From positions 124,001 to 188,000 of the IMG/VR virus record IMGVR_UViG_3300024308_000188: a stretch of DNA of 64,000 nucleotides; one strand, given 5' to 3'. The notes below the pieces were generated by a model. It ran no database searches and had not been told where the DNA came from. It saw nothing but the letters and a program-made list of their open reading frames with translations. Every line of letters starts with the position of its first letter. The first letter of the stretch is position 1. A program made the translations under genes and the position numbers. This document shows positions 5,445 to 26,241 of this stretch, piece after piece.

Positions 5445-5529
5445 AACTAAACCAAGTGTGTCAAAAATAGGGGTGGCTTCGGCTGCCCTTTTTTGGTATA
5501 ATGTATTCAATGGTTAAGGCAAGAACCAT
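5445..5529 (+). promoter_or_regulatory. composite promoter copy 2 with embedded terminator and AGGCAA leader hairpin
   Basis: CCAAGTGTGTCAAAAA; GGGTGGC-TTCG-GCTGCCC-TTTTTT inside the spacer; TATAAT 5497-5502; ATGGTT-aaggcaag-AACCAT. Confidence 0.85.
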
Positions 5530-5562
5530 GTCAAATCTTGCCAAACATAAGAGAATCTAGTT

Positions 5563-5970
5563 ATGTCACAAGCACGAATCAATTTGAAAAGTTTAATGCG
5601 CGTTACACTGAAAGATCGTAAAGGCACTTTCACTATACTGTCTTTTCGTTTTTCATCGAATCCAACTAAAACCATGATCACTTGCATGGCGGATTCTGAC
5701 GACGAAATTTGTCATACCACGGAAGAAAATGTCGAAAAAGTTGTTTGCTACGATATTCGCAGCAATGGCTTGCAGGAAAGTACGGTCATGAACTATCTGA
5801 CTGACGATAAACATTTTGATGTTAATGATCCTGAAGCTGACATCTACGCTGCGGTTTCAGATGCGCTAAGTGCCAAAGGTGCTAACCGAATCAAAGACGA
5901 ATTCCAGCGCCAAATAAACACACTGGACTACGATTCGATCAAAGAAAAGTTGGTAGCTCTGGCTCAGTAA
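5563..5970 (+). CDS. hypothetical protein
   Basis: 135 aa ORF downstream of promoter copy 2. Confidence 0.75.
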   Translation: MSQARINLKSLMRVTLKDRKGTFTILSFRFSSNPTKTMITCMADSDDEICHTTEENVEKVVCYDIRSNGLQESTVMNYLTDDKHFDVNDPEADIYAAVSDALSAKGANRIKDEFQRQINTLDYDSIKEKLVALAQ

Positions 5971-6017
5971 AATCATTCGGTGGCTTTCGGGCCACCAACT
6001 TTTTGGGAGAAAAGTTT

Positions 6018-6707
6018 ATGCGTAAACTTACCACGGAAGTAGTTTTTCAAGTGCTTCATTTGCTGATGCAATCAACTAAGGCTATGCCTGAAGTTTCTTT
6101 GCAGGGAAGTCGCGTGTACATTTTCGGCAAACTTTTTGCACAATCAAATGAGGCTCGTGAAATTCTCAGACTGTGTGCAAAGCAATGTCACAGGCAAGAA
6201 CGAGCTGAACCAACTTTACCGACTGTCGCAAGTAAGTTTTTCATGGATCGTTATGAGAACGATTTTATCAAGACAGTCGTTCAAAATACAGCGACAGGTC
6301 GAATTACTGAATTTACTTTGATGGACATTACTATCGGTCTTGCGCCTGAAGCAAGTTATGATGTTTTCGATCAAACGATGGAAGCCAACGCTTTTTCTCA
6401 GTACCTGAAGTTTCATGTGACACAAGCTCATACAAAAGTTTGTTTCGCAAAGAATATCGATATGAGAATCAATCATGGTTTACCTATCGGCCTTAGCATT
6501 CACCAACTGGTCAACAAAAAAGTTGGTGTTTTTCTCAGTAACGATCTGGTCAATGTTGACGTTCTTTCTTACACAGATTTGAAAGATGTTGCTAAAACTC
6601 GTGATGGACGTAAGCAACCTTTTGCCCTCGACATACAAGTTTTGTGTGAAGGCAAAAAACTTTTCATCAAGTCAAATTTAATAAGCAGTTTAGTTGCTGA
6701 TAAATAA
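6018..6707 (+). CDS. hypothetical protein
   Basis: GGAG RBS before MRKLTTE. Confidence 0.75.
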   Translation: MRKLTTEVVFQVLHLLMQSTKAMPEVSLQGSRVYIFGKLFAQSNEAREILRLCAKQCHRQERAEPTLPTVASKFFMDRYENDFIKTVVQNTATGRITEFTLMDITIGLAPEASYDVFDQTMEANAFSQYLKFHVTQAHTKVCFAKNIDMRINHGLPIGLSIHQLVNKKVGVFLSNDLVNVDVLSYTDLKDVAKTRDGRKQPFALDIQVLCEGKKLFIKSNLISSLVADK

Positions 6708-6718
6708 CCGGAGAATCT

Positions 6719-7507
6719 ATGAAGTTATTCAAATTAGAATGTAACAAACCACAGAAAAACGGCTCAAGCTTACCTCTGCAAATTTTGTCGCTGGTGAAAC
6801 GCCTTACTCTTGGTGATGTTTATGATGTGGTAATGAACATAGAAAACATTACCAAAGACGTATCTGATTGTGAACCCGAAAACTATGTTTATCGGATCAC
6901 ACTGCTTTCAGCGCAAAACGAAATTTCTTATGTTGATGGAAATATCGACGAAGTATATTCTGCTTTAAAAGTGGTTGTTGCTGATCTTCGTAAGCTGGAA
7001 ATGAATTCCACAATTTTTGCAGACTGGATATTAAAAGGCATGGCCGCTGATATTTTATCGCACGATGCGCTTGACGATCTGGACTTGCCGGAAATTGCCA
7101 ATGAACTTTGTGAAGGTCTTGACCAGCTGGATCTGGATATTAACTTTGATGATATATCCAATCTTGTTAGTATCGAACTGGAAAAGTTTAAGGTATTTGC
7201 TTTAGCCGCGATGAAAACAAAATTCGTGTTTTTAGATGAAAACAAAATCGAAGAGTTTTCATCAGCTACCGAAATTGTTGACTTCTTTACCAAAAATAAA
7301 AATGTAGGAATGCCTGCATCCATTTACGTAACGAACGATCAATTGAATATTAAAAATTCAACAGCCGCTTTCCGTCAGATCAGTCAGATTCTTACTGATA
7401 ACTTCGGGCCGACTGCGGTAAAACGTCAGAAGAAAGTTGATAAAGCTTTTATTGTTGCATCTATTGAAGATGCGTTGGCTTCAGCCTTGAATTACGTGCG
7501 TTCTTAA
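6719..7507 (+). CDS. hypothetical protein
   Basis: GGAG RBS; 262 aa. Confidence 0.75.
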   Translation: MKLFKLECNKPQKNGSSLPLQILSLVKRLTLGDVYDVVMNIENITKDVSDCEPENYVYRITLLSAQNEISYVDGNIDEVYSALKVVVADLRKLEMNSTIFADWILKGMAADILSHDALDDLDLPEIANELCEGLDQLDLDINFDDISNLVSIELEKFKVFALAAMKTKFVFLDENKIEEFSSATEIVDFFTKNKNVGMPASIYVTNDQLNIKNSTAAFRQISQILTDNFGPTAVKRQKKVDKAFIVASIEDALASALNYVRS

Positions 7508-7558
7508 AACTAAACTGAGGGGAACAGAAGTTCCCCTACCGCTTGAAAGGAAAATCAA

Positions 7559-8314
7559 ATGCGACAATTATATACCGTACCAAACAAACCTGCTACTGCG
7601 GATTTATCAAGCTTAATAAAGATCATGTATGATCAACAAGCGCGGATTAGTATCTCAGGCAGTTATCTTGGTGAGTGTCTTTATGAACCTGACAGTTTAG
7701 CAACTTTAATAGTTCGTGGCACTATAAAGATTAGTGTTGAAAAAGTTTATCAGTTGTTCAACGTGACTTCACGAAAAATGTTCGTTGAAGAAAACAAGGT
7801 TATCATTATTAATAACTCTTGTCACTTACACGTTGAGCTTATTTGGGATGGTTCGTTTCCGACTATTGACGAAGAACGCATCTACAAAATAAAATGTTTG
7901 TTGAACTGTAGTAATTACAGTCCAGACCCAAGTATATCAGTATCGCCACGAGCGGCACTTGATGTACTGAAAGATGATTTAGAAAATTACATAGATCATC
8001 TGAATGAAGTTTTAGAGTTTGAAGGCAAATCTTATTCTGCACACACTCTGAAAAACTTTAACTATGATATGCGGTTTGGTCTTAATCTTTTTAGCATTCA
8101 AAAAGGATCGCGCATAACATATCTTGACCGTGGCAAGTTGAAATCTGCTACGGTTGTAAATTTCAATCCGGTAAACTTTGCACTGATTAAACAGGAAGGT
8201 ATGCCGACACGAGATCTTCATTTGATCAACATTGAGTTTAAAGAAGGCGGTTATATGTCTTACAAAACTCTTTACTTAAATCAGATTGTCGCAATAGGAG
8301 GCAATAATGAATAG
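7559..8314 (+). CDS. hypothetical protein
   Basis: AAGGA RBS; 251 aa. Confidence 0.75.
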   Translation: MRQLYTVPNKPATADLSSLIKIMYDQQARISISGSYLGECLYEPDSLATLIVRGTIKISVEKVYQLFNVTSRKMFVEENKVIIINNSCHLHVELIWDGSFPTIDEERIYKIKCLLNCSNYSPDPSISVSPRAALDVLKDDLENYIDHLNEVLEFEGKSYSAHTLKNFNYDMRFGLNLFSIQKGSRITYLDRGKLKSATVVNFNPVNFALIKQEGMPTRDLHLINIEFKEGGYMSYKTLYLNQIVAIGGNNE

Positions 8315-8987
8315 CAAACAAAAAATTATTGCGGATAATCTGGTTATGGTTAAACGCATTGCCAACAGTTTAATTGGCAAACTTTCCGCGAGTATACAGC
8401 TGGATGATTTAATCCAAGCTGGTATGCTTGGAATACTGGAGTCGATTGATCGTTATGATTCAAACTCTGGCACTTCTTTTCAAACTTTTGCTGGAATTCG
8501 AGTTTACGGTTCAATGTTAGACGAGGCCAGAAAACTAGGTTGGATTCCTAAAAATGTTTGTGCAGAAGCTCGTAAACTAAATGAAGTGCGTTCTGCATTA
8601 GAGCAGAAGTTTTTGCGCGTTCCAACAAATATTGAAGTTGCTCATGAACTGAATATTTCTATCGAAGAGTTTAATAAACTCGAACGTGAAACACACAGCA
8701 TTCATGTGTTACTTGACAGTGAACTCAATGAAAGCAACTTTGACGGTTTTTGCACTGAAGTGGATTTTGTGGATCGTCAGTGCGAGGTCACAAAGTTAGG
8801 ATCTGCTTTAAAAGTATTCGTATCAAAACTGCCAAAGCAGGAATCTATTGTAGTTAATCTTTACTATATGCGCGATCTTAACATGGAAGAGATTGGAAAT
8901 CGTATGGAACTTTGTGTGCCTCGCATAAGTAATCTTCATAAACAAGCATTGAAAAGAATGCAATTAAACATGCGTTCTTGGGTATAA
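8307..8987 (+). CDS. fliA: RNA polymerase sigma factor, FliA/WhiG (sigma28) family
   Basis: Region 2 LDDLIQAGMLGILESIDRYD..GTSFQTFAGIRVYGSMLDEARKLGWIPK, region 3 PTNIEVAHEL, region 4 LNMEEIGNRMELCVPRISNLHKQALKRM; GGAGG RBS. Confidence 0.9.
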   Translation: MNSKQKIIADNLVMVKRIANSLIGKLSASIQLDDLIQAGMLGILESIDRYDSNSGTSFQTFAGIRVYGSMLDEARKLGWIPKNVCAEARKLNEVRSALEQKFLRVPTNIEVAHELNISIEEFNKLERETHSIHVLLDSELNESNFDGFCTEVDFVDRQCEVTKLGSALKVFVSKLPKQESIVVNLYYMRDLNMEEIGNRMELCVPRISNLHKQALKRMQLNMRSWV

Positions 8988-8997
8988 GGAAAGTACA

Positions 8998-9588: not shown

Positions 9589-9591
9589 TTT

Positions 9592-9873
9592 ATGAACTCT
9601 GATAAGTTTAATGCGTACATAGTTTCTGTTACCGAATTCGATCACGGTATGTCTCGTCCAGATGGACACATTGTTTGCTTTGATGTTGAAGAAGGTAAAA
9701 AGTTTGCTATTGCAAAACAAGGCTACGTTTACAAAGATGCTGATGTTCGCAGTGAAATATCTGGACAGTTTAAGCGCTGCTTACTTAGTCCTATTGGCAT
9801 CGAAACCGTTCAAAAATTTAATGGCTTGGTTTGGTCTAACGATATAATCAAGCACGTAATGATCATCGAATAA
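9592..9873 (+). CDS. hypothetical protein
   Basis: GGAG RBS; 93 aa. Confidence 0.7.
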   Translation: MNSDKFNAYIVSVTEFDHGMSRPDGHIVCFDVEEGKKFAIAKQGYVYKDADVRSEISGQFKRCLLSPIGIETVQKFNGLVWSNDIIKHVMIIE

Positions 9874-9886
9874 TTGAGGAATTTTT

Positions 9887-10923: not shown

Positions 10924-10925
10924 AA

Positions 10926-11669: not shown

Positions 11670-11676
11670 AAACTTT

Positions 11677-12752: not shown

Positions 12753-12784
12753 GTAATGTTTTGCTCAGTCATTAAGAGGTAGAT

Positions 12785-12877: not shown

Positions 12878-12879
12878 TC

Positions 12880-12937
12880 AACTGATCTGAGTGCGTCAAA
12901 AATAGACATAGACGCACTTGGTCATTTTTGGTATAAT
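12880..12937 (+). promoter_or_regulatory. composite promoter copy 3
   Basis: ACTGATCTGAGTGCGTCAAAAA, 32 nt spacing, TATAAT 12932-12937. Confidence 0.78.
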
Positions 12938-13004
12938 GGCATCATACAAACAAGGGAAGTGCTGTACTTTCACATGCACAAAAGTTTGTTAGGAGAAGAA
13001 GTAA

Positions 13005-13229: not shown

Positions 13230-13255
13230 AAAGTTTATCATTTGAGGATCAATAA

Positions 13256-14875: not shown

Positions 14876-14929
14876 ACAAACGTGGCCTCTTAATTGGGGC
14901 CGCAAACTTTTGCGTATGGGAATTGTGAT

Positions 14930-15638: not shown

Positions 15639-15639
15639 T

Positions 15640-16981: not shown

Positions 16982-17451
16982 TGAAAAAAGCTGGCAATAG
17001 AATTCAAATAACAGCAGAAGTTCAATCGGTAGTTCGTAGTGTTGACTCTCAATTATCTAAGGCAGTTGACAAAGGATTTATAACAGGACAACAAAAAACA
17101 TTGGCCGTTAATCTGATAGGTCGCTCTGCAAATAAAAGGACTAAGAAGAATCTTGGTATTTTACGGCCATTCAAACATGATACAACGAATAAAGAAATGA
17201 TGGGAGAACGTGATTCTGGAAAAATTGCTTTAAGCTTTCCTTTTGCCTTTGTTGATTGTTACGGAACTTTCTGGCTATGCTGTGATTCAGATACTGGTCT
17301 TTATTTAGAATGCAAGATCGATTCTAAATTTGATACTGTTTACACGCAACGCTTTTATTTAAAGGGCAATACAAAAAGTTGTATAAAGAAACTGTGCCGA
17401 TTCTTAGAATCATCGAACAACTTGGAAACTTCTCTTCGTAATCTGAACTAA
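16981..17451 (+). CDS. hypothetical protein
   Basis: TAATG coupling; 156 aa. Confidence 0.72.
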   Translation: MKKAGNRIQITAEVQSVVRSVDSQLSKAVDKGFITGQQKTLAVNLIGRSANKRTKKNLGILRPFKHDTTNKEMMGERDSGKIALSFPFAFVDCYGTFWLCCDSDTGLYLECKIDSKFDTVYTQRFYLKGNTKSCIKKLCRFLESSNNLETSLRNLN

Positions 17452-17535
17452 ACCAAGTGTGTCAAAAACAGCGGTTGTTATGAATGGCCGCTTTTGGTAT
17501 AATGTCGTCATTGGTAAGGCAAGAGTGTCTACCAA
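17446..17535 (+). promoter_or_regulatory. composite promoter copy 4 with AGGCAA leader hairpin
   Basis: CCAAGTGTGTCAAAAA; -35 TTGTTA, 17 nt, TATAAT 17498-17503; TTGGTA-aggcaagagtgtc-TACCAA. Confidence 0.85.
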
Positions 17536-17560
17536 ATAACCCACATTTGAGGATCAAGAA

Positions 17561-18052
17561 ATGTATCAAGTAACATTAGTATATGAAAGCAACGTAACTG
17601 TAACTTCGCGTAAACCAATAGAACCAAAAAATGGTTTTGTTAAGATCGAAAATCTTTTGGTTCCTGCTCAAAAAGTTGATTGTGTTTTCATGGAAGAATC
17701 TGACTACTTAATAACATATCCTATTATTAAAACAGAAGTTCTTTTTGTTGACGCTGTTTCGTTTAACGAAAAAGGTGAATTGCAGGTTGATTCGTTTTGC
17801 GCGAACGCTGTTGCAGGTTTCAAACTTTTAGGCCACACGATTTTAGAGGCCAGCCGCCAAACATTATATGAAGGCGAGTTCACTATGCACTCAGATGGCT
17901 ATCGTGAAATTTCTGAAGAAGCGTACAACAGACTTAATATTATGCGCTGCCTTTATTATGTGGAAGGCTCAAACATTTCAGGATATGCCGATGCCAATAA
18001 AGTTGTAGTGCTTTATGCGGATCGTTTAGAACCTCGTTACTTTAAAGTTTAG
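17561..18052 (+). CDS. hypothetical protein
   Basis: GAGGA RBS; 163 aa. Confidence 0.75.
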   Translation: MYQVTLVYESNVTVTSRKPIEPKNGFVKIENLLVPAQKVDCVFMEESDYLITYPIIKTEVLFVDAVSFNEKGELQVDSFCANAVAGFKLLGHTILEASRQTLYEGEFTMHSDGYREISEEAYNRLNIMRCLYYVEGSNISGYADANKVVVLYADRLEPRYFKV

Positions 18053-18063
18053 CGGAGAACTTT

Positions 18064-18708
18064 ATGAAGAAAATAACACGACAAAAAACAACTAAAAGTA
18101 AAGCAAAGAAAGAAAAGCCTACTTTAGTTACTCCATTGTTTCCAGCTGCTTACTTTGGTTTTGATCTGGTATCAAAAGCCGCTGGCTATTCTTTTGAAGT
18201 AGATTGGGATAATTACGCTGTTGGTTTATCTGGACGGCAAAATCTTTCCGATCTGAAAGAACTGATTAGTCTGCTTGAGCATTTTATTCAAATTGAAAAG
18301 ACTAATAAGGTTTATCAATATTCAGAATTAGATATTTCCGATTTTGAACTTGAAACTTATGAACCTTTTGAATCTGGTATGTCTCAAACTGCCATAGTCA
18401 TTGATTGTTCGGTGTATAAAAACAGATACGCTTTATTCTGTACCGCAGACACGATCAACTTTTCCACGCTGAATATTGATTCCTGCGAAGATATTGAAGT
18501 TGTTCTGGTGCTGGAATGTAATCACAACCGAGCGCGTATCGTCAGACTTTCTAAGCTATTGCAATCAAAGGCTGTTATGACGCTTGCCGCCCAGTTTGAA
18601 TATGTTGCTTATGCACCAATTTCTGATAAACAAACTTTGATGGAAAAAGTCTTATACTCTGATACAGAAGAAGTATATTTGGAAAGACTTTCCCGTTTAG
18701 AAAAGTAA
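18064..18708 (+). CDS. hypothetical protein with a Lys-rich N-terminus
   Basis: GGAG RBS; MKKITRQKTTKSKAKKEKP. Confidence 0.75.
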   Translation: MKKITRQKTTKSKAKKEKPTLVTPLFPAAYFGFDLVSKAAGYSFEVDWDNYAVGLSGRQNLSDLKELISLLEHFIQIEKTNKVYQYSELDISDFELETYEPFESGMSQTAIVIDCSVYKNRYALFCTADTINFSTLNIDSCEDIEVVLVLECNHNRARIVRLSKLLQSKAVMTLAAQFEYVAYAPISDKQTLMEKVLYSDTEEVYLERLSRLEK

Positions 18709-18725
18709 TGTGTGTGATAAATCAA

Positions 18726-18766
18726 GGACTGGCTGTTATGACCGAATGGCAGCTAGTCCGTTTATT
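18726..18766 (+). terminator. probable terminator hairpin
   Basis: GGACTGGCTG/CAGCTAGTCC 10 bp stem followed by GTTTATT. Confidence 0.6.
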
Positions 18767-18861
18767 CAAAACTTTGTTCGGTATTGAACTAGATTTAATA
18801 ACAATACAAACTTTTCGCCATGACATTGAAGCAAAATTGTCGATGCGAATTAAGGATCAAA

Positions 18862-19035
18862 ATGTTTGTTGAATATTGCTTACGGGTAATCGCGCTGATT
18901 GCTGTTATTCTTTTAATTGTTTGCGTTTTGCCATTTCCTTTTGTTAAAGCGCATCCGATATTAACGCCGACTATTGGATCAATGTGTGTTATTTATTTAA
19001 TATACTTTGTATTCTATAGGCCACGGCACTTTTAA
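18862..19035 (+). CDS. small membrane protein
   Basis: AAGGA RBS; two hydrophobic segments. Confidence 0.65.
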   Translation: MFVEYCLRVIALIAVILLIVCVLPFPFVKAHPILTPTIGSMCVIYLIYFVFYRPRHF

Positions 19036-19059
19036 ACGTAACCACTTGAGGATCTAGAA

Positions 19060-19644
19060 ATGGTTAAGAATGTAATCAACTTTATTTTGCGCTACACAGT
19101 CGGATTAGTAATAGCTCTTTTTATCGAATTACTTTTCCGAATTGTCGTAGCTTGTTTACCCTTTTATTCAAAACTGGATAAAAAGTTTGCTGCCAAAGCG
19201 AAACACATCGATACAGTGGCTGCCGAACTTAAATCTACTCGTATTACTTTGTGGACAAAAAATAAAATGTGTCAGTCGGAAGAAATGCTCAGCCGATCTA
19301 TGTGTCGTCGTTTTAACGCGCTGTATCGCTTTATGTCTTTGGACTTTGTAGAAAGCTTGATGTTGAATGATGAAAAATCTACAACTTGGCTGCAACACAG
19401 AGAAAAAGCTTTGGATGAATTTTACACTCTTTTGCTTTTGGCTAGAAATGAGCAAAATGATCCTTCTTTTACTCGTGAAAAGTTTGAGATAGAATTACGT
19501 AGAACTGCCAGCTATTTTGATGCTTGGTCAACATTGATGAATTTGATGAATGAAATGTTTGGCCGTTTAGGTCTAATTGTTTTGGCGGTCAAACTGGATT
19601 TAGTAACTGTAAATCTTAAGGTAAAGTGTAATGACAAAGAATGA
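19060..19644 (+). CDS. hypothetical protein with N-terminal TM
   Basis: GAGGA RBS; 194 aa. Confidence 0.72.
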   Translation: MVKNVINFILRYTVGLVIALFIELLFRIVVACLPFYSKLDKKFAAKAKHIDTVAAELKSTRITLWTKNKMCQSEEMLSRSMCRRFNALYRFMSLDFVESLMLNDEKSTTWLQHREKALDEFYTLLLLARNEQNDPSFTREKFEIELRRTASYFDAWSTLMNLMNEMFGRLGLIVLAVKLDLVTVNLKVKCNDKE

Positions 19645-19852
19645 AAAGCTTCTCAGGTCTTTGAAACGCAAATTGGCTTTGTTGGATCTTACTGATGCTG
19701 AATATGCTTTGTTGGGTTTGGAGCCGCCAAAAAGAAAGCCACCTAAGCGTTTGATCGAAAAGGCAGCTAAACTTGTTCGTGCCTTAAAACGCAAGGCCAA
19801 GAAAAAAGCTGATAAGAAAAGTTTAGATCCGGTAATCTGGCATACTAGCTAG
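19631..19852 (+). CDS. small, highly basic protein
   Basis: 73 aa, K/R-rich (KRKAKKKADKK). Confidence 0.68.
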   Translation: MTKNEKLLRSLKRKLALLDLTDAEYALLGLEPPKRKPPKRLIEKAAKLVRALKRKAKKKADKKSLDPVIWHTS

Positions 19853-19862
19853 GAGAATAAAA

Positions 19863-20435
19863 ATGCAGTTAGTGTCTTATATTTTTAATCACCGTTGGGA
19901 TTCGGAATGGAAATCTATTCCTGCAACAATGCGTGACGTAATTCGTCCGGCCCAAACTCGCAACGATAAGTTGGATGCTTTCAATAAAGCCAACGATGTT
20001 ATGTTGCGTAGTATTTTATTGAATAATGAAAATCCAATATTGGATTTTAGTTTGAATCGTGAAATCGTTGTTCCTGAGAAAAAGTCTGAGCAAAGCAGCG
20101 TGTGGTATTTACGTGCTTTACCTTTGAACCAAAGTCAGCCGATTGATGCGGATTATTTGCTGGATCTTCAGGAAACTATATCAGCGTACCGCAAAAAGAC
20201 TGTGGAAAACTCTGACTGCGCTTTTTGTTTACCTCAAAGCGAGAACAACGATTTACGTAATGTTGTTTGGTTTGATCTGGACTCCGGTACTTTTCTTACC
20301 TACAACAAAAATTTCTGCACTCGCATTCAAAGACACTTTCATGATTTGGCGAAACGCCATGTTATGGATTATATCTCAGATGCGGGTGAAGAACTCCAGA
20401 AGCTTTACTCTGCTTCTGTTTATAGCTCACGTTAA
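19863..20435 (+). CDS. hypothetical protein
   Basis: AGGAG RBS; 190 aa. Confidence 0.75.
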   Translation: MQLVSYIFNHRWDSEWKSIPATMRDVIRPAQTRNDKLDAFNKANDVMLRSILLNNENPILDFSLNREIVVPEKKSEQSSVWYLRALPLNQSQPIDADYLLDLQETISAYRKKTVENSDCAFCLPQSENNDLRNVVWFDLDSGTFLTYNKNFCTRIQRHFHDLAKRHVMDYISDAGEELQKLYSASVYSSR

Positions 20436-20437
20436 AT

Positions 20438-20596
20438 ATGTGTGCTTGTTTAGGTTGTGAATCAAAACGCAAGCTCAACAAACGTCTTAAGCAAAAGCTC
20501 GTAGAGCACAAACGCTTGATGAAATTGTATGAGCGCAAGTTAATGGCTTTGGGTGTAGATCCTAAAAGCCTTGAATCAAAGAGAGAATCTAAATGA
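20438..20596 (+). CDS. 52 aa basic protein
   Basis: Fills the gap exactly; TGA overlaps the next ATG; MCACLGCESKRKLNKRLKQKLVEHK... Confidence 0.6.
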   Translation: MCACLGCESKRKLNKRLKQKLVEHKRLMKLYERKLMALGVDPKSLESKRESK

Positions 20597-21222
20597 AAGA
20601 ACCTAAGAAACTTGCAAAGAAACCTTTGGCTAAAAAGCCTTCGCTTCCATTGAAGAAGTCTTTTATTAAGTCTCAGGCCGAGCAAAAATCTGTTCCTGCT
20701 AAAGCAGAGAAAAAAGAACCTGTCACTTTAACTTACAACAGCCAGATTGAAAAGTTGGAATGGTTATCAAACTTTCAACCTTGTCTGATCGTTGTGGTTA
20801 TTGATCGTACTACTGGCGAAACATTAAAGTTTAGCAGTGTAGAACAAGGCTTCCATTACTTCAAAACTCGCAGTCCTGAATTCCGCCAAAAGATTTACAA
20901 CTGCGTCAAAGCAAAAGACGCTCGTTATCATGGCAGTGAAAAATCTGGTTGCCCTATGCGACCTGACTGGAAAGAAATTCGCAAGAGCGTGATGAAAAAT
21001 CTTCTTCTTGCAAAATACGGCCAAAACTTGATTTTGAAAAAGTGGCTTCTTGCTACTGAAGATGCTAAGTTGGTTGAACTTGCACCTTGGGACAAAGAAA
21101 AGTTTTGGGGTGTTGACGAACAAGGGAACGGATCAAACAATTCTGGTTTACTTACAGAAGAAGTTCGTGAAATTCTGGCCGATAAATCAATCACAACTGT
21201 TTATATGGATCGTTACTTATGA
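20593..21222 (+). CDS. NADAR (YbiA-like) family protein with a K/P-rich N-terminal extension
   Basis: FSSVEQGFHYFK, DWKEIRKSVMKNLLLAKYGQN, LLATEDAKLVE, FWGVDEQGNGSNNSGLLTEEVRE. Confidence 0.88.
   Translation: MKEPKKLAKKPLAKKPSLPLKKSFIKSQAEQKSVPAKAEKKEPVTLTYNSQIEKLEWLSNFQPCLIVVVIDRTTGETLKFSSVEQGFHYFKTRSPEFRQKIYNCVKAKDARYHGSEKSGCPMRPDWKEIRKSVMKNLLLAKYGQNLILKKWLLATEDAKLVELAPWDKEKFWGVDEQGNGSNNSGLLTEEVREILADKSITTVYMDRYL
21159..21185 (+). promoter_or_regulatory. possible sigma28-type promoter
   Basis: AGAAGTTC-N11-GCCGATAA versus consensus TAAAGTTT-N11-GCCGATAA, 33 nt before the ATG at 21219. Confidence 0.4.
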
Positions 21223-22037
21223 CACAGTTAACTGATGCAAAACTCGATACAATGGTTTCTGCCGTCCAACAATTCGTTGCTCGTACAGTCGTTGACGATT
21301 TAGTTATTGCTTTGACGACCGAACAGCTTTTAAAATTGATCGCAGTTAATTCTGCTGATCTGAAAGCTGATCCTTCTGCGATTTTAAAGTTGCAGGAAAT
21401 GCTGATGTTAAGCGGTGTATGTTTGGTTAGCTTACCGACAGAACAGCGTGAATCAGCCACTGAAGGCAAGGCCAAAAAGTTGTATTACATTTTCCGTGAT
21501 ACAAATACTTTCCTGACAGATGCTGAAAAATATTCAATGGATGATTTTGATGATCTGTTAAATAGTAAACAAGTTTTGTTTGCAGATATTCAAAATCTGA
21601 AGCGTTTAAATTTACCGGAAGATAAAGTTGCTTCCGTTGTATGTGAAGCCGTTGGCCACAGTCGTTTGTCTATTCGACAGACAGGTAAATGCTCTCGCTG
21701 CGGATCTAAAATCCCTGCAACTTCTTTTACAGTCCTTATTACGGATAAAGGAAATGTTGGCATTGTGCCAACTAAGTTCCGTCCGATAGATCGCTTGGAT
21801 TGGAAAGATTTGATATTTGTTCCTGAGAAAACTTTGCAAATTTTGGCACGTAGTAAAAAGTTTAAGACTGTTGTTGATGTGAATAACAGTTACGATCTTG
21901 TTGTGCCGAAACAGGACAAATCTGAATTAATGTCCGACGACGATAAGCTTGAGATACATAAAATAGTCGCAAGCAAGTTGGAAGGTAAGGACAAAAAATC
22001 TCACGATAAGAAATCTCGTGAAAAAGATAAGAAGTAG
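21219..22037 (+). CDS. hypothetical protein with a CxxC motif and basic C-tail
   Basis: CSRCG; ends KDKKSHDKKSREKDKK. Confidence 0.75.
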   Translation: MTQLTDAKLDTMVSAVQQFVARTVVDDLVIALTTEQLLKLIAVNSADLKADPSAILKLQEMLMLSGVCLVSLPTEQRESATEGKAKKLYYIFRDTNTFLTDAEKYSMDDFDDLLNSKQVLFADIQNLKRLNLPEDKVASVVCEAVGHSRLSIRQTGKCSRCGSKIPATSFTVLITDKGNVGIVPTKFRPIDRLDWKDLIFVPEKTLQILARSKKFKTVVDVNNSYDLVVPKQDKSELMSDDDKLEIHKIVASKLEGKDKKSHDKKSREKDKK

Positions 22038-22105
22038 ATTTTACTTCGTTAAATAGTATTGCCAGATAAACTGGCCGAATCAAATATAACAACAGAGAAT
22101 TAATT

Positions 22106-22378
22106 ATGACACAGCAAAATACCGCGCAAGTTTGTGACTCAACTGAAGTTGTTGAATTTAGTACAAGCACCTCGGAAATAGTTGATGTTTTACACGATGC
22201 TGCCACGCGAACTTATTGGCAGCGTTACTTTGAAGCTGATTGTCAATATCCAGAACTTACTGACGAAAAACTTAAAGAGTATATCGAAAATCTTAGTTTC
22301 TATAAAAATGAAGATGACGAATATTCTTTTGAATTGTTCGGTGAAGGTTTTGTCGTTAAATTAAATTTCTTAGATTAA
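22106..22378 (+). CDS. hypothetical acidic protein
   Basis: 90 aa ORF. Confidence 0.7.
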   Translation: MTQQNTAQVCDSTEVVEFSTSTSEIVDVLHDAATRTYWQRYFEADCQYPELTDEKLKEYIENLSFYKNEDDEYSFELFGEGFVVKLNFLD

Positions 22379-22393
22379 TGTAAAGGAAACTTT

Positions 22394-24103
22394 ATGAAAA
22401 GTATCACAGTTCGTATTACTCACCTTATTGCTGTTGGTGAACTTTTTCAATCTCAAACAAACAAAGCTATGGCCGCTATCATCCCAAAAGATGATGCTTT
22501 GCCAACTTACAAAATTGAAACCGATGATTACAGACTGATTGAACAACTTTCTGGCGCTGTACTTTTGGTTCCTAAAAATCCGATTGATGCTGATTGCTCA
22601 AGTACAATTCAGCTGACCGAAATGGAAGTTGGTTATGGTGACTCTATCTATCCGGTTTATTCTGCGGTTACGCATGACAAAAAATCTGGAAAAACTCGTC
22701 CAATCTTTTTTATTGCGGGTATGGTTCAAACAATTTATGGTAGTTCTTTGTTCTTGCCGACTTTGACCGTACCGGCTGATGAAGTTGATATTGCGGCTTT
22801 GGTAAAAGATCCTGAAGAATCTGCAACAGGATTTGAAAAGCCACAGGCTTCATCTTTAGAGTTTATTCCAACAGACGAAGGCGCAAAAGTTGTTGCGCCT
22901 GAACCCGTTGTCGAAAACAGCGAGTCCAATGTAGAACCTGAAGAAGTTGAGTTTGATTTGATTCCAACAACTTCAGCTTTACTCGAAACTGATGCTACTC
23001 AATTGAATAAAGATGCTTTTGATGCCGCTGTTGAAAATTCAGGCTACGCGCATTTGTTTTCTTTGGATAGTTACAAAGTTTACGCGAATATTCAAAACGC
23101 TGAGTTTATCCAACAGTTAACAGAATCTTTAAGAGAAAGCGGTGATGTCAGCGCTTTCATTTATGAAGCTTTTGTTGGCCTTACAACAGACGATACAAGT
23201 TTAGTTTGGGATCAGGAATTTTGCGCCAACTATTTGGCCCCTGTTCTGTCACACTTGACCGCTTTGGCTGAAGGCCAGACGCGCGTTATTAAAGTTAGTA
23301 GTCAGTTTGATTGTACTTCGTTTGAAAGTTTTTGTGCTGCCTTACGAATCATAAAACATTTAAGTCTGCCGTTTGAATCGTCGCTTGATGCTCCAACAGT
23401 TGAAGCTTTCTTGCTTGATACAGCTTATGTAACAAACGAAGTTTTGGGCGCAATCCTAAACATTTATGTTGCGATCAATGAAGGTAAAACTACAACAGCT
23501 TGGTCTAAGCGCGGTAAAGCGTGTATTGTTTTAAGCTTGCTCGGCTTTATTGATGTGAATCCAGAAACACGATTCACAGAAGATGGTGCATTGTATGCTG
23601 TTGACCTGATCCGAACTTATTACACAACAGAAGATCAGTTTGAAGATAGCGGCTGCACTAATTTACTTCGCTATGTTCCTGAAGTTATTGACCAACTTTT
23701 CGAAGCTTTAAAAGTTCGCAAGCTGGTTGACAATCGCTGTTTATCCGAAACATCTATCGAGAAACGCGCTAAAATTGTTCGCGCTGTTTTGAATGATGTT
23801 ATTACAGTGAACGCTTTATCTTCGTGCGTACCAGACGTTTACGAAGCTTTATGTAAAGTTGAAAAACGTCTGTCTGATACTGGAGTTATTGTTGTCGGTG
23901 ATTCATGGTTAGCTCAACTCGAAGCCGCCTTACTTGCGGCTGATGATCTGGATATTGAATTCGCAGAGTATTCCACAAAGACTTTTCCGGTGGCACTGTC
24001 AGTTTGTTCAATCCTTCATCCTGAAATTGAAGTAACTTCTATTAATAGTGTTGATAGCAAAGAACAGCGCGTTAAAAATCTTATTGATGCACTGTTGACC
24101 TAA
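22394..24103 (+). CDS. hypothetical protein, 569 aa
   Basis: AAGGA RBS; long acidic ORF. Confidence 0.82.
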   Translation: MKSITVRITHLIAVGELFQSQTNKAMAAIIPKDDALPTYKIETDDYRLIEQLSGAVLLVPKNPIDADCSSTIQLTEMEVGYGDSIYPVYSAVTHDKKSGKTRPIFFIAGMVQTIYGSSLFLPTLTVPADEVDIAALVKDPEESATGFEKPQASSLEFIPTDEGAKVVAPEPVVENSESNVEPEEVEFDLIPTTSALLETDATQLNKDAFDAAVENSGYAHLFSLDSYKVYANIQNAEFIQQLTESLRESGDVSAFIYEAFVGLTTDDTSLVWDQEFCANYLAPVLSHLTALAEGQTRVIKVSSQFDCTSFESFCAALRIIKHLSLPFESSLDAPTVEAFLLDTAYVTNEVLGAILNIYVAINEGKTTTAWSKRGKACIVLSLLGFIDVNPETRFTEDGALYAVDLIRTYYTTEDQFEDSGCTNLLRYVPEVIDQLFEALKVRKLVDNRCLSETSIEKRAKIVRAVLNDVITVNALSSCVPDVYEALCKVEKRLSDTGVIVVGDSWLAQLEAALLAADDLDIEFAEYSTKTFPVALSVCSILHPEIEVTSINSVDSKEQRVKNLIDALLT

Positions 24104-24160
24104 ACTTTTCTAGGTGTGTCAAAAATGAGTGTTGCCTATTATAGTCTGTTTTGATATAAT
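24102..24160 (+). promoter_or_regulatory. composite promoter copy 5
   Basis: GGTGTGTCAAAAA; -35 TTGCCT, 17 nt, TATAAT 24155-24160. Confidence 0.8.
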
Positions 24161-24186
24161 AGGCACATTCAAACAAAGGAGAAAAC

Positions 24187-24441
24187 ATGCAAGCTAATAT
24201 ACTTAGCGTTAATAATGGGTTCCCATTCAATATGACTGTTGAGCAATTAAAGCCAAACGCAGTTGTAGAAATTCATATTAACGGACGCCAACAAAATTGT
24301 TTGATTATTTCCGTTGAAAAAGTTAAACAAGGTTTTAAAGGCGAAAGATTTTTTATGGCAATGACTCAACAAGGTGATCAATTTAGAGCAAGCCAGTTGA
24401 GCATTATTCGTTTAGTGAATCACAGCTTGACCTACGGGTGA
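24187..24441 (+). CDS. hypothetical protein
   Basis: AGGAG RBS; 84 aa. Confidence 0.72.
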   Translation: MQANILSVNNGFPFNMTVEQLKPNAVVEIHINGRQQNCLIISVEKVKQGFKGERFFMAMTQQGDQFRASQLSIIRLVNHSLTYG

Positions 24442-24444
24442 TAT

Positions 24445-24861
24445 ATGAAAAAAGAAATTGTTGGAATTCCGGCACTTCAAACATACGCCGAGAAGTTCTT
24501 TGCTAAAGTTCCTGATGCTGACTTTCAAACACTCAGGTTATATGCTGAAAAACGTCCGGCCTTTGCTGAGAACTTAATAACAGCTGGAAAAAGTTTGCGC
24601 TATTCATCAAAAGATTACGCAATCACTTTGACTCGCATCAGTGAAAAAGTTTATCAATTACTTTTGGATCGTATTGATTCCGAAGGTAACTCGCAAAAAG
24701 ATTTATACAGACTTACGCCATTCTATGCAATGCGTTTGTTTGCAAGTTTTGCTATGGCTTGTGTTCCACGCAAATCACGCGATCTTGAATTGGTTCTTGA
24801 TCGTCACCAAGCTAGACGAATTGATCCAAGCGTGTCAAAAACAGTGGTTGATCGACACTAA
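24445..24861 (+). CDS. hypothetical protein
   Basis: 138 aa; 3' end carries promoter copy 6. Confidence 0.7.
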   Translation: MKKEIVGIPALQTYAEKFFAKVPDADFQTLRLYAEKRPAFAENLITAGKSLRYSSKDYAITLTRISEKVYQLLLDRIDSEGNSQKDLYRLTPFYAMRLFASFAMACVPRKSRDLELVLDRHQARRIDPSVSKTVVDRH

Positions 24862-24908
24862 GCTTTTTGGTAAAATACAGTCATTGGTTAAGGCAATAAG
24901 GCCACCAG
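24819..24908 (+). promoter_or_regulatory. composite promoter copy 6 with AGGCAA leader hairpin
   Basis: TGATCCAAGCGTGTCAAAAA; -35 TTGATC, 17 nt, TAAAAT 24871-24876; TGGT-taaggcaataaggcc-ACCA. Confidence 0.75.
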
Positions 24909-24937
24909 TTAAACATATTATGATGGGAATCTAGATC

Positions 24938-25714
24938 ATGAAAAGTGTACAAGAGTTAAACAACGCTAGTATGTCAGACCTTTTAACTTTCGCGGAAGAA
25001 AAAGGTTTAACCATTCCTGAACAAATGCGTTCAACAAAATATCAAAAAGCTGTTGTTGAGTATTTGACCCGAAATGCAATCTACGCAAACAAAGCACCTG
25101 TTCAGGTTGTTATCGACACTACTCAGGAATGCAAACTTTTGGTTTCAAGCGAATGTGTTGATGCTTATGTAGAATTTTTAGCACAAACAGCTGCAAAAGG
25201 TCGTGCGCCTGACTTTATGAATTCAGGTTATGAAATTCGTGAAGATCTTGGTGTGGTTACTGATGCACGTTTGCTGTTTAACTACGGCATGGTAAAACGT
25301 GTTGAAAAGTTTATTCAGTTACCTAAACTTGGGCTGCATATTAATTCTTTGAAAGATAAGTTTTCCGTTTTTGTTGTTGACGTTCCGTACAGGGTTGAAT
25401 TTTCATTTGCCGACGAATTCAAAATTCAACCTATAACCCCAAATTCAATAATGGTTGACGGCCAACTTTTTACAAATTGCAGTTACAGCGTTCGTATTCT
25501 TCGTGAAGATGAAGAAGATATGGAAGAAGATGATGCTGATTTACCTGTAGAAAACTTTGTCGATTTTCAGGAAATGAGTTTGCCAGCTTTGCAGCGTTAC
25601 GCTCGTGAAAATCTGCCGGATAAAGGTGCAAGTATTGATCACGGTATTTTCACCAGCCAAAGTTTCCTGCAAGAATATTTGGATGCTGTTATAAACGGAA
25701 TTGATATAGAATAA
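24938..25714 (+). CDS. hypothetical protein with terminal Rho_N/HeH-like helical modules
   Basis: N-term ELNNASMSDLLTFAEEKGLTIP; C-term DFQEMSLPALQRYAREN. Confidence 0.7.
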   Translation: MKSVQELNNASMSDLLTFAEEKGLTIPEQMRSTKYQKAVVEYLTRNAIYANKAPVQVVIDTTQECKLLVSSECVDAYVEFLAQTAAKGRAPDFMNSGYEIREDLGVVTDARLLFNYGMVKRVEKFIQLPKLGLHINSLKDKFSVFVVDVPYRVEFSFADEFKIQPITPNSIMVDGQLFTNCSYSVRILREDEEDMEEDDADLPVENFVDFQEMSLPALQRYARENLPDKGASIDHGIFTSQSFLQEYLDAVINGIDIE

Positions 25715-25778
25715 AGTTTTGGCAAAGGTGATTTTATCAAGTCGCCTTTTACGCAAGCTTTAGCAAAAGGATATTTAT

Positions 25779-26030
25779 ATGAGAAAAGAATTAGTTGGTG
25801 CAATCGTCGCTTCTCAATTTAATCAGATTGCGATAGCCGAGGATATTAGTGAAGCCGAAGTTAAGCGTATTGTTAAAAGTTTAAAAGAAGATTACAGTGA
25901 GCCGCAGCAAGATTCTTGGCACGATGAAGGTATAGCTACTCGTTATCGTGCAACAAAAAAGTTGATTCCAAAAAGTTTACGTAGAGCAAAACGTGCTGTA
26001 CAAAAGAAGGCACGTAAAGCTCAACGATAA
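25779..26030 (+). CDS. hypothetical protein with a basic C-tail
   Basis: AAGGA RBS; 83 aa. Confidence 0.72.
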   Translation: MRKELVGAIVASQFNQIAIAEDISEAEVKRIVKSLKEDYSEPQQDSWHDEGIATRYRATKKLIPKSLRRAKRAVQKKARKAQR

Positions 26031-26032
26031 TC

Positions 26033-26090
26033 AACTGATCGAGGTGTGTCAAAAATAGTGGTTGTTATGAGCTACCACTTTTGATATAAT
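26033..26090 (+). promoter_or_regulatory. composite promoter copy 7
   Basis: ACTGATCGAGGTGTGTCAAAAA; TTGTTA, 17 nt, TATAAT 26085-26090; spacer hairpin AGTGGT/ACCACT. Confidence 0.85.
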
Positions 26091-26151
26091 TACACCATCG
26101 AAACAACAGAGAAAGTTTGTCTGAAGTTTCGTTCCCGATAAAAAGTTTGTT

Positions 26152-26241
26152 ACTAAACAAAGTGTGTCAAAAATAGTGGTTGTTATGAGCTGCCACTTTT
26201 AGTATAATGTATACATTGGTTAGGCAATAAAGCTCAGCCAA
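26152..26241 (+). promoter_or_regulatory. composite promoter copy 8 (tandem with copy 7) with AGGCAA leader hairpin
   Basis: ACTAAACAAAGTGTGTCAAAAA; TTGTTA, 17 nt, TATAAT 26203-26208; TTGGTT-aggcaataaagctc-AGCCAA. Confidence 0.85.

What the first reader, a model, noticed from the sequence alone, without database searches (positions are those of the whole stretch)
5510..26241. Covarying 5' leader hairpin with an AGGCAA loop at four promoters
At the predicted +1 of copies 2, 4, 6 and 8: ATGGTT-aaggcaag-AACCAT, TTGGTA-aggcaagagtgtc-TACCAA, TGGT-taaggcaataaggcc-ACCA and TTGGTT-aggcaataaagctc-AGCCAA. Stems vary with pairing kept (T-A, A-T, T-G) while AGGCAA is invariant, as expected for a protein-bound RNA site such as a boxB/nut-like antitermination signal. 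Copies 1, 3, 5 and 7 have a different leader (CAT..AAACA), giving two promoter classes. AAAGGCAAG also occurs in the structured spacer near 39464.
Basis: partly seen in the sequence, partly recalled or inferred. Interest (0 to 1): 0.68.

Follow-up and report, generated by a model that had tools for sequence, protein, structure and literature searches.

The report
5'-end hairpin on phage early transcripts
Four of the nine repeated early promoter cassettes in this uncultured jumbo phage start their transcripts with a small conserved hairpin, which looks more like a 5'-end cap that protects the mRNA than like a lambda-type antitermination site.

Summary
They start 0-1 nt after the predicted +1 of four extended -10 sigma-70 promoters, at window 5510-5529, 17511-17535, 24883-24909 and 26216-26241. 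These promoters belong to nine promoter/terminator cassettes of the PeSL type. The cassettes occur only in this 214.5 kb phage record (plus a second contig from the same sample) and in four related metagenomic phages. A diverged version occurs in Phage NCTB.

Every class-A leader in five genomes (16 distinct sequences) keeps the hairpin, and the 3' arm differs in sequence and distance.

- AGGCAA is not invariant; relatives have AGGGCAA and AAGGCAG.
- GGC(A) is not displayed in a loop. In copies 4, 6 and 8 it forms an upper helix, and in copy 2 it pairs with a downstream CUUGCC, a candidate pseudoknot. The apical loops vary.

No boxA and no N/Q family protein was found. Strict covariation is weak because the 5' strand hardly changes.

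Best reading: a 5'-terminal stem-loop module that stabilises a subset of early mRNAs (confidence 0.45). A protein-bound regulatory or antitermination role is not excluded. The transcription start is predicted, not mapped.

The parts
5445..5502 (+). Cassette 2. Upstream box AACTAAACCAAGTGTGTCAAAAATAG (5445-5470), GC-rich stem-loop plus T-run (5469-5490 plus T-run) and extended -10 TGGTATAAT (hexamer 5497-5502). Predicted +1 is A5509.
5510..5529 (+). Class-A leader hairpin of copy 2: AUGGUU-AAGGCAAG-AACCAU, a 6 bp stem with 1 unpaired 5' nt.
   Evidence: The G2 orthologue has AUAGGUU/AACCUAU, that is an inserted A-U pair.
5518..5542 (+). Candidate second helix of copy 2. GGCAAG (5518-5523) pairs with CUUGCC (5537-5542), giving an H-type pseudoknot or an alternative hairpin.
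   Evidence: This pairing is the MFE fold. A 6 bp Watson-Crick match has p = 0.006. G3/G4 have UUUGCC (G-C to G.U) and G2 has GGCAG/CUGCU at the same offset. Support is moderate.
17446..17503 (+). Cassette 4: box, stem-loop 17470-17492 plus T-run, -35-like TTGTTA with a 17 bp spacer, and TGGTATAAT (hexamer 17498-17503). Predicted +1 is A17510.
17511..17535 (+). Class-A leader hairpin of copy 4. Lower stem UUGGUA/UACCAA, bulge A, upper stem GGCA/UGUC, loop AGAG.
   Evidence: The orthologues have different 3' strands (CCGAU, AGCCGAU) and still pair.
24819..24876 (+). Cassette 6: box, weak stem-loop 24843-24859, and TGGTAAAAT (hexamer 24871-24876). Predicted +1 is A24883. The upstream ORF ends inside the cassette at 24861.
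24883..24909 (+). Class-A leader hairpin of copy 6. Lower stem AUUGGU/ACCAGU (one U.G pair), bulge UAA, upper stem GGC/GCC, loop AAUAAG.
   Evidence: G1/G3/G4 have ACCAAU (U.G to U-A).
26151..26208 (+). Cassette 8: box, stem-loop 26175-26197 plus T-run, and TATAAT 26203-26208. Predicted +1 is A26215. It lies 118 nt after cassette 7 (26033-26090), which has no gene of its own in this genome.
   Evidence: G3/G4 carry a 202-203 aa gene between cassettes 7 and 8.
26216..26241 (+). Class-A leader hairpin of copy 8. Lower stem UUGGUU/AGCCAA, upper stem GGC/GCU, loop AAUAAA.
   Evidence: G1 has GGGC/GCCC with AAUCAA and G3 has GGGC/GCUC. Every change seen in a paired position keeps the pair.
3630..3694 (+). 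Cassette 1 (class-B leader AUUGAAACA..., unstructured).
12880..12944 (+). Cassette 3 (class-B leader AUACAAACAAGG...).
24103..24167 (+). Cassette 5 (class-B leader AUUCAAACAAAGGAG, 20 nt, unstructured).
26033..26097 (+). Cassette 7 (class-B leader AUCGAAACA...). It is an orphan promoter that reads into cassette 8.
37707..37771 (+). Its leader is of neither class.

Best explanation
The four hairpins are the transcribed end of one flavour ('class A') of a repeated early promoter/terminator cassette in an uncultured jumbo phage.

Each cassette holds these parts, in order:
- an upstream box, AACTGATCnnnGTGTGTCAAAAA, whose A-tract lies about where a proximal UP element would;
- a stem-loop of variable sequence, followed by a T-run, that carries a -35-like hexamer 17 bp from the -10;
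- an extended -10, TGnTATAAT.

This is the architecture described as PeSL in T4-like phages. Host sigma-70 RNA polymerase most likely starts at the A that lies 7 nt after the -10 (inferred, not mapped).

In class A the first ~14 nt, A(U/A)UGGU(U)A(A/G)GGCAA, are part of the conserved module. A locus-specific downstream segment pairs with them. The RNA is therefore born with a compact 5'-terminal hairpin that leaves 0-1 unpaired nucleotide. The hairpin has a lower stem UUGGU/ACCAA and an upper stem GGC(A)/(U)GCC; in copy 2 the upper stem is replaced by a pseudoknot-type pairing.

The most likely effect is protection of these primary transcripts from 5'-end-dependent decay. That pathway (RppH, then RNase E) needs a few unpaired 5' nucleotides. 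Class-A operons would then have longer-lived mRNA than class-B operons, whose leaders are open (inferred).

Why the 5' strand itself is so conserved is not explained by this reading. It may be homogenised together with the cassette, or it may also serve as initial transcribed sequence or as a binding site.
For: Position and persistence:
- The hairpin starts at predicted +1/+2 in all 4 copies here and in all orthologues in G001, G002, an ENA contig and a Logan contig. That makes 16 distinct leaders, with MFE -5 to -11.6 kcal/mol.
- Lower-stem pairs L2-L5 form in 16 of 16 leaders.
- The changes seen in paired positions preserve pairing: U-A to U.G, G-C to G.U, A-U against U-A at two positions, U-A to A-U once, and one inserted A-U pair.
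- The 3' arms differ in sequence and lie 8-21 nt away, which does not fit a DNA palindrome or operator.

Stability and strand:
- Shuffling only the 3' tail gives p = 0.006-0.038 per copy.
- Summed MFE is -111 kcal/mol for the sense strand against -80.5 for the antisense strand.

Specificity:
- A covariance model built from the copy-8 family alone recovers copies 6 and 4. All hits at E < 0.05 in 781 kb lie at +1 of a cassette promoter.
- The genes behind the four promoters are unrelated to each other, so the leader is not a by-product of gene duplication.

Support from a distant relative:
- Phage NCTB carries a homologous cassette. Four of its 9 leaders also begin with hairpins at +1/+2, and these have quite different sequences. 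This suggests that the structure at the 5' end is what is selected.

Background:
- Cassette promoters are the top sigma-70 matches, with TG-extended -10 elements.
- PeSL precedent: PMC2839356 and PMC4122927.
- 5'-terminal stem-loops as stabilisers in E. coli: Emory 1992, Bouvet and Belasco 1992, Arnold 1998, as listed in PMC3997798.
Against: - No transcript 5' end has been mapped. The only public runs that hold this phage are kept as contigs.
- The host is unknown, so the presence of an RNase E/RppH pathway is assumed.
- A pure stabiliser should tolerate any sequence. Yet the 5' strand is conserved about as well as the -10 element across genomes whose leaders have otherwise diverged, and GGGCAA recurs in one NCTB leader.
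- Strict covariation statistics are not significant.
- The stems are short (4-7 bp lower stem, 3-5 bp upper stem).
Confidence: 0.45

Rival explanations
1. The hairpin is a binding site for a phage or host protein, or acts on RNA polymerase directly. It would then control elongation (nut- or put-like antitermination through the terminator-like hairpins inside the operons) or control translation or decay of class-A operons.
For: - The 5' strand A(U/A)UGGUUARGGCAA is conserved in sequence, not just in pairing, across five genomes. GGGCAA recurs in a 5' hairpin of the distant Phage NCTB.
- Class-A operons contain terminator-like hairpins. One, at 5979-5996, lies right after the first gene and is conserved in G1/G3/G4 and replaced by another hairpin in G2. 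The phage sigma factor gene lies downstream of it.
Against: - The apical loops vary in sequence and length.
- GGC(A) is predicted to be paired.
- There is no boxA.
- No N, Q or other antiterminator family was found among about 45 ORFs.
- Every operon has its own promoter, so read-through is not needed for expression.
- A single 26-28 nt hairpin is unlike put, which has two stem-loops.
Confidence: 0.2
2. The conserved +1..+14 acts at the DNA level as the initial transcribed sequence of one promoter flavour, setting start-site choice, promoter escape or an operator. The downstream complement would be of little consequence.
For: - Conservation is one-sided: the 5' strand is nearly invariant.
- It lies directly next to the conserved -10.
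- G2 has a cassette with CATTGGTT at +1 but without GGCA and without the complement (G2r 190489).
Against: - A complement is present in 16 of 16 class-A leaders, although their downstream sequences differ.
- The tail-shuffle p-values are low.
- The G.U pairs make the fold sense-strand specific.
- Compensated indels occur in the copy-2 lineage.
Confidence: 0.15
3. The hairpin has no function of its own. It is inherited with a cassette that spread by recombination (PeSL-type shuffling) and has not yet decayed.
For: - The cassettes are repeats that mediate indels. An extra gene lies between cassettes 7 and 8 in G3/G4.
- Contigs of related strains break or join at the cassettes.
Against: - The hairpin persists in G2, whose proteins are far more diverged and whose leader sequences after +16 are unalignable.
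- The 3' arms have changed repeatedly without losing pairing.
Confidence: 0.1

Closest known systems
PeSL (promoter-early stem-loop) cassettes of T4-like phages (Arbiol et al. 2010, PMC2839356; Comeau et al. 2014, PMC4122927)
   Same: - Repeated intergenic modules that combine a strong sigma-70-type early promoter with a stem-loop terminator or attenuator overlapping the -35/spacer.
- They are placed after the stop codon of the upstream gene and before genes of unknown function.
- They are associated with gene indels between related genomes.
   Different: - The phage here is not evidently T4-like. Its topoisomerase II is closest to Phage NCTB and to Dickeya, Erwinia and Yersinia jumbo phages.
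- It has a long conserved upstream box.
- In 4 of its 13 cassettes there is a second, transcribed hairpin module at +1 with a conserved 5' strand. The PeSL passages I read do not describe such a module.
5'-terminal stabiliser stem-loops of E. coli mRNAs (ompA, papA; Emory, Bouvet and Belasco 1992; cited in PMC3997798)
   Same: A hairpin within 0-2 nt of the transcript 5' end, ahead of an otherwise open leader and Shine-Dalgarno sequence.
   Different: - Those act independently of sequence.
- Here the 5' strand is conserved across paralogues and genomes.
- The effect on stability is untested here.
Lambda-type nut sites (boxA + boxB with N protein)
   Same: A small RNA hairpin in the leader of early phage operons that contain terminator-like structures.
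   Different: - There is no boxA.
- The hairpin sits at +1 rather than tens of nucleotides downstream.
- There is no conserved GNRA-like pentaloop.
- No N-like protein was detected.
H-type leader pseudoknots, such as the T4 gene 32 autoregulatory pseudoknot (from my own knowledge, not checked here)
   Same: Copy 2 could form a 5'-proximal H-type pseudoknot with two 6 bp stems and loops of 2, 0 and 7 nt.
   Different: This applies to only one of the four paralogue families, the support is moderate, and there is no link to an autoregulating protein.

Membership tests
lambda-type nut site (boxA/boxB) | boxA-like linear element (CGCUCUUA / GCUCUUUAACAA) just upstream of the hairpin | tested here: not met
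   The hairpin begins at predicted +1/+2, so no transcribed sequence precedes it. The boxA consensus with up to 2 mismatches gives 14 matches against 13.5 expected in the window, none of them in a class-A leader.
lambda-type nut site (boxA/boxB) | Short stem that presents a conserved purine-rich (GNRA-like) loop recognised by N | tested here: not met
   The apical loops are AGAG, AAUAAG, AAUAAA, AUAG, AAUAUC, AAUACC and an 8-nt loop. The conserved GGC(A) is predicted to be paired.
lambda-type nut site (boxA/boxB) | Cognate N-like arginine-rich antiterminator encoded in the early region | tested here: inconclusive
   Pfam scans of about 45 ORFs between 3.7 and 52 kb found no N or Q family, and a PHROGs scan of ten ORFs next to the cassettes added only topoisomerase II. 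No ARM-like N-terminus is obvious. N proteins are small and divergent, so absence is weak evidence.
lambda-type nut site (boxA/boxB) | Confers read-through of downstream terminators | not testable with these tools
   Terminator-like hairpins exist inside class-A operons (5979-5996, 33481-33505). Read-through needs an experiment.
PeSL promoter/terminator cassette | Sigma-70-type early promoter (-35, -10) | tested here: met
   The cassettes score 9-10 of 12 with a 17 bp spacer. Six of the seven cassettes the scan lists carry TG before the -10 (not cassette 8); cassettes 2 and 9 are not in its list but read TGGTATAAT. The -10 is TATAAT in 8 of 9.
PeSL promoter/terminator cassette | Stem-loop overlapping or between the promoter boxes, able to terminate upstream transcription | tested here: met
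   GC-rich stems plus a T-run at 5469-5490 and 17470-17492 and at 26057-26079 and 26175-26197 by sequence, with different sequences that each pair. The stem-loop is weak or absent in cassettes 1, 3, 5, 6 and 9. Terminator activity is not tested.
PeSL promoter/terminator cassette | Many copies, intergenic, flanking ORFans and marking indels between close relatives | tested here: met
   There are 9 copies in the window and 13 in the phage. The downstream genes are ORFans. G3/G4 have a 202-203 aa gene between cassettes 7 and 8 that G0/G1 lack.
PeSL promoter/terminator cassette | Host phage belongs to the T4 superfamily | not tested
   Only topoisomerase II was compared. Its best hits are Phage NCTB and Dickeya, Yersinia and Erwinia jumbo phages at 44-50% identity. 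T4 core genes were not searched.
5'-terminal stabiliser stem-loop | Helix begins within about 2 nt of the transcript 5' end | tested here: inconclusive
   This is met for the predicted start, which lies 7 nt after the -10, in 16 of 16 class-A leaders. The start itself is not mapped, and no RNA reads are available.
5'-terminal stabiliser stem-loop | Prolongs mRNA half-life by blocking 5'-end-dependent RNase E/RppH attack | not testable with these tools
   This needs half-life measurements. The host is unknown.
HK022 put RNA | Two adjacent stem-loops of about 65-70 nt that act on RNA polymerase without a protein | tested here: not met
   There is a single hairpin of 20-30 nt. There is no second conserved stem-loop, and the rest of the leader diverges. 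The put architecture is taken from my own knowledge.

The most novel reading that the evidence does not exclude
The class-A leader is a clade-specific regulatory RNA. Its conserved 5' strand and bulge, A(U/A)UGGUUARGGCAA, would be recognised by a phage-encoded factor or by RNA polymerase itself. This would make transcription from these four promoters resistant to the terminator hairpins embedded in the cassettes and operons. It would thereby time expression of, among others, the phage sigma factor. Such a system would be a new kind of promoter-proximal antitermination in jumbo phages.
Probability: 0.15. Interest if true: 0.7.

Novelty: new variant of a known kind. Interest (0 to 1): 0.4.

Why it matters
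Little is known about how jumbo phages that rely on host RNA polymerase time and dose their early genes. This clade appears to use one mobile promoter/terminator cassette in two flavours. One flavour gives open leaders and the other gives transcripts that are capped by a hairpin from the first nucleotide. If the hairpin sets mRNA lifetime, it is a simple built-in way to give unrelated early operons different expression levels from near-identical promoters. It would also be a compact, portable part for expression design. If it instead binds a factor, it would mark a new early regulatory circuit. Either way, the cassettes give a set of well-defined predicted early promoters and start sites for an uncultured phage group.

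Tried and rejected
- Megablast of 22 kb against GenBank phages found no match.
- The pattern scan of IMG/VR gave only two related genomes among 47 stretches; the rest were chance matches.
- The pattern scan of JGI metagenomes gave only the phage's own sample.
- Single-protein locus searches found only G001.
- Rfam at gathering threshold found only a tRNA at 525-596.
- Sequencing runs. All holders are stored as contigs, so no transcript starts could be read. The 'joints' at cassettes are most simply cross-alignment of contigs among the repeated cassettes, and I make nothing of them.
- One covariance model over all class-A leaders. MAFFT could not give a structure-consistent alignment, because the two helices are separated by asymmetric loops of variable size. 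I therefore built the model from the copy-8 family only.
- A 10-codon upstream ORF in the copy-2 leader (AUG at 5528). Rejected because the changes in G3/G4 are non-synonymous and G2 has no AUG.
- Strict alternation of classes A and B along the genome. It is not kept in G2, so I treat it as chance or history.
- AAAGGCAAG at 39464 as a further copy. Rejected.
- A sigma-70-dependent pause element or Q-type site in +1..+9. By eye there is no -10-like word with the key A and T.
- The phiR1-37 transcriptome paper was consulted. That phage uses its own RNA polymerases and A/U-rich promoters, so it is not informative here.
- The ENA contig could not be searched as a whole. I walked along it with three exact-protein look-ups instead.
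- No contig looked human, no other genetic code was used and no toxin gene was met.


Full report
**Context**

The window is bases 124001-188000 of a 214.5 kb IMG/VR phage record that is about 85% complete. An 80.8 kb contig from the same sample carries four more cassettes and probably holds the rest of the genome.

Nearly all ORFs in the window run on the + strand. The region encodes:
- two topoisomerase II subunits;
- a sigma-70-family protein (8307-8987);
- UvdE;
- a NADAR-domain protein;
- a 2OG-Fe(II) oxygenase;
- many ORFans.

By topoisomerase II the nearest deposited phages are Phage NCTB (50% identity) and jumbo phages of Dickeya, Yersinia and Erwinia. The complete relatives G001 and G002 show no Pfam RNA polymerase beta-subunit domain but have one or two sigma-family genes. 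This fits early transcription by the host polymerase, although very divergent phage polymerases could be missed.

**The repeated element**

Nine copies of a 75-nt cassette lie at window 3627, 5442, 12877, 17443, 24100, 24816, 26030, 26148 and 37704. All are on the + strand, and there are none elsewhere in the 214.5 kb record.

Each cassette has:
- an upstream box, AACTGATCnnnGTGTGTCAAAAAyAG;
- a segment that in several copies forms a GC-rich stem-loop of different sequence, followed by a T-run;
- an extended -10, TGnTATAAT.

The simple sigma-70 scan ranks the cassettes among its best matches and finds a -35-like hexamer (TTGTTA, TATACA, TTGATC...) at 17 bp, inside the stem-loop.

This is the design published as PeSL, 'promoter-early stem-loop'. 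PeSLs are composite promoter/terminator cassettes that flank ORFans in T4-like phages and mediate modular shuffling (PMC2839356, PMC4122927). The same behaviour shows here. Two relatives carry an unrelated 202-203 aa gene between cassettes 7 and 8, which are adjacent (118 nt apart) in this genome.

Phage NCTB has a recognisably homologous cassette with a diverged box, TAACTTTTTTATCnnGGTACAAAA, at the same distance from TTTTGCTATAAT.

**The observation**

Taking the A 7 nt after the -10 as +1, the helix starts at +1 or +2 in every case.

Cassettes 1, 3, 5 and 7 have an A-rich leader (AUUGAAACA...) that is mostly unstructured at its 5' end. The ninth has yet another leader. The two-class description therefore holds.

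**Relatives**

A pattern scan, word-based protein searches and exact-protein look-ups gave four related genomes:
- G001 (319.5 kb, complete, near-identical synteny);
- G002 (286.6 kb, more distant);
- an ENA contig of 329 kb (G3);
- a Logan contig of 24 kb (G4).

The first gene of the copy-2 operon is 74-75% identical in G3 and G4, and the first gene of the copy-8 operon is 85% identical in G4. G001, G3 and G4 keep class-A leaders at all four orthologous promoters. G002 keeps the copy-2 and copy-8 leaders and has one more class-A leader elsewhere. That gives 16 distinct sequences.

**What the structure is**

RNAfold gives the same picture throughout:
- a lower stem, (A)UUGGU(U) with (A)ACCAA(U);
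- a one-sided bulge, A or UAA;
- an upper stem, GGC(A) with (U)GCC, GCU or UGUC;
- an apical loop that varies: AGAG, AAUAAG, AAUAAA, AUAG, AAUAUC, AAUACC.

The 'invariant loop' is therefore mostly the 5' strand of an upper helix.

In the copy-2 family the lower stem closes an 8-nt loop. The loop's GGCAAG can pair with CUUGCC 7 nt further on, at 5537-5542. That pairing is the MFE fold of the whole leader, and its 6 bp Watson-Crick match has p = 0.006. G3/G4 have UUUGCC and G2 has GGCAG/CUGCU at the same offset. The two helices could coexist as an H-type pseudoknot. I rate this as a candidate only.

AGGCAA itself changes in relatives. It is AGGGCAA in G1 copies 2 and 8 and in G3 copies 6 and 8, and it is AAGGCAG in G2. 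The G insertion after 26222 is seen in three public runs.

**Is it more than chance?**

- Shuffling only the 3' tail of each leader gives MFE p-values of 0.012, 0.028, 0.038 and 0.006 for the four copies here. My Fisher combination of these is about 1e-4.
- In a table keyed to the 5' strand, pairs L2-L5 form in 16 of 16 leaders. Two-sided changes occur at L2 (A-U in the copy-2 family, U-A elsewhere), L3 (one G2 leader) and L7 (copy 4 here). There is an inserted A-U pair in G2, plus many one-sided wobble changes.
- Between G0 and G1 the copy-8 leader differs at four paired positions, and all four keep pairing.
- The fold is sense-specific: summed MFE is -111 against -80.5 kcal/mol.
- A covariance model built from the copy-8 family alone finds the copy-6 and copy-4 families at E = 2e-4 to 0.02. 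All hits at E < 0.05 in 781 kb of the five genomes plus NCTB loci lie at +1 of a cassette promoter.

Against this, the formal count on the model-fitted alignment shows 95.8% of cells paired, compared with 15-58% when slid. It shows only one two-sided change, and 63 of 500 shuffles reach the observed score. The 5' strand is almost invariant, so 'covariation' in the strict sense is weak. The case rests on repeated, independent complements to a fixed 5' strand.

**What it most likely does**

Three facts shape the interpretation:
1. The helix begins at the first or second nucleotide of the predicted transcript.
2. The genes behind the four promoters are unrelated. The 3' arms differ in sequence and distance, so each locus supplies its own complement to a module-borne 5' strand.
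3. In Phage NCTB four of nine cassette leaders also begin with hairpins at +1/+2. Their sequences are quite different: GCAGAA.../UUCUGC, UGUUGU/ACAACA, AAGUUG/CAGCUU, and a 10-bp AUGUUGGGGC/GCUCUAGCAU.

Selection thus seems to act on having the 5' end base-paired. That is the defining property of the 5'-terminal stabiliser stem-loops of E. coli mRNAs, which block 5'-end-dependent attack (references 92-95 in PMC3997798).

I therefore favour a stabilising 5' cap-like hairpin that gives class-A operons longer-lived mRNA than class-B operons. Shown here: the sequence, the predicted fold, its conservation and its position relative to the -10. Inferred: the start site, the RNA-level function, and the host decay pathway.

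**What this does not explain, and the rivals**

The 5' strand is conserved in sequence about as well as the -10. This holds even in G002, where the leader beyond +16 is unalignable. GGGCAA also recurs in one NCTB hairpin.

That leaves room for three rivals:
- a factor-binding role (antitermination or translational control);
- a DNA-level role as initial transcribed sequence;
- simple homogenisation of the cassette by recombination.

The nut-like version fails each feature I could test. There is no boxA, no conserved displayed loop, and no N/Q family. Terminator-like hairpins do exist inside class-A operons. The clearest is at 5979-5996, after the first gene of the operon that also encodes the sigma factor. 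It is conserved in G1/G3/G4 and replaced by another hairpin in G2.

**Verdict**

This is a real, conserved feature. The nut-like interpretation is not supported.

It is best filed as a new variant of known kinds: PeSL-type cassettes that carry a 5'-terminal leader hairpin module. The interest is moderate, and simple experiments would settle the function.

Noticed in passing
window-wide; examples at 3748, 4438, 12979, 13228, 13450, 26140, 26245, 26885, 33127, 37785, 40426: The word AAAAAGTTTGT (up to 1 mismatch) occurs 45 times against 9.6 +/- 2.9 expected, 37 of them on the + strand. It is concentrated in genome bins 100-170 kb. Several copies sit in leaders just upstream of Shine-Dalgarno sequences, and some sit at N-termini, where they read K-K-F-V. 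It could be a second promoter type (the phage encodes its own sigma factor), a translational signal, or something else.
   Followed up: partly
window 13238-13255, 17543-17560, 26255-26277: A shared translation-initiation module, CATTTGAGGATC(n6-8)ATG, precedes three unrelated genes. Copies 2 and 6 share a different one, GRGAATCTAG(n2-3)ATG. The leaders therefore look assembled from several small modules.
   Followed up: no
window 8307-8987: A sigma-70-family protein (regions 2, 3 and 4) is encoded inside the class-A copy-2 operon. G001 has a second sigma-like ORF of 347 aa, and G002 has only the longer type.
   Followed up: partly
window 5979-5996: The hairpin GGUGGC-UUUCGG-GCCACC, followed by AAC and UUUUU, lies directly after the first gene of the copy-2 operon. 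It is identical in G1, G3 and G4 and is replaced by a long AU-rich hairpin in G2. It could be an internal attenuator or terminator, or a 3'-end stabiliser.
   Followed up: partly
window 26033-26150 compared with L196:9180-10000 and L198:11644-12427: Cassette 7 has no gene of its own in this genome and reads straight into cassette 8. Two relatives have an unrelated 202-203 aa gene there. This is a cassette-flanked indel of the kind described for PeSLs.
   Followed up: yes
Phage NCTB LT598654.1, loci L180-L188: A homologous promoter cassette with a diverged upstream box (TAACTTTTTTATCnnGGTACAAAA), at the same distance from TTTTGCTATAAT, is present in at least 9 copies on one strand. This shows the cassette family is older than the clade studied here.
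   Followed up: partly
window 26903-34003: A run of genes encodes highly acidic, E/D-rich repeat proteins and K/A/P-rich repeat proteins (AKAPAKADKK-type repeats). These dominate the direct-repeat output. Their function is unknown.
   Followed up: no
window 39472-39494: A near-perfect 23-nt palindrome, GAGGATTATAA-T-TTATAATCCTC, lies in the spacer after the topoisomerase A-type gene. It contains TATAAT on both strands.
   Followed up: no
window 46250-49201: A 983-aa ORF has a sub-threshold Intein_splicing match (31.9 bits against a cut-off of 35.8) at residues 204-450. It may be an intein-interrupted gene.
   Followed up: no
window 525-596: One tRNA gene (Rfam RF00005, 59.6 bits).
   Followed up: no
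whole stretch 17001-27000: Near-identical DNA occurs in subsurface metagenomes (one of them is probably the source sample). At lower word share it also occurs in wastewater and drinking-water runs. The phage or close relatives are therefore not confined to one site.
   Followed up: partly
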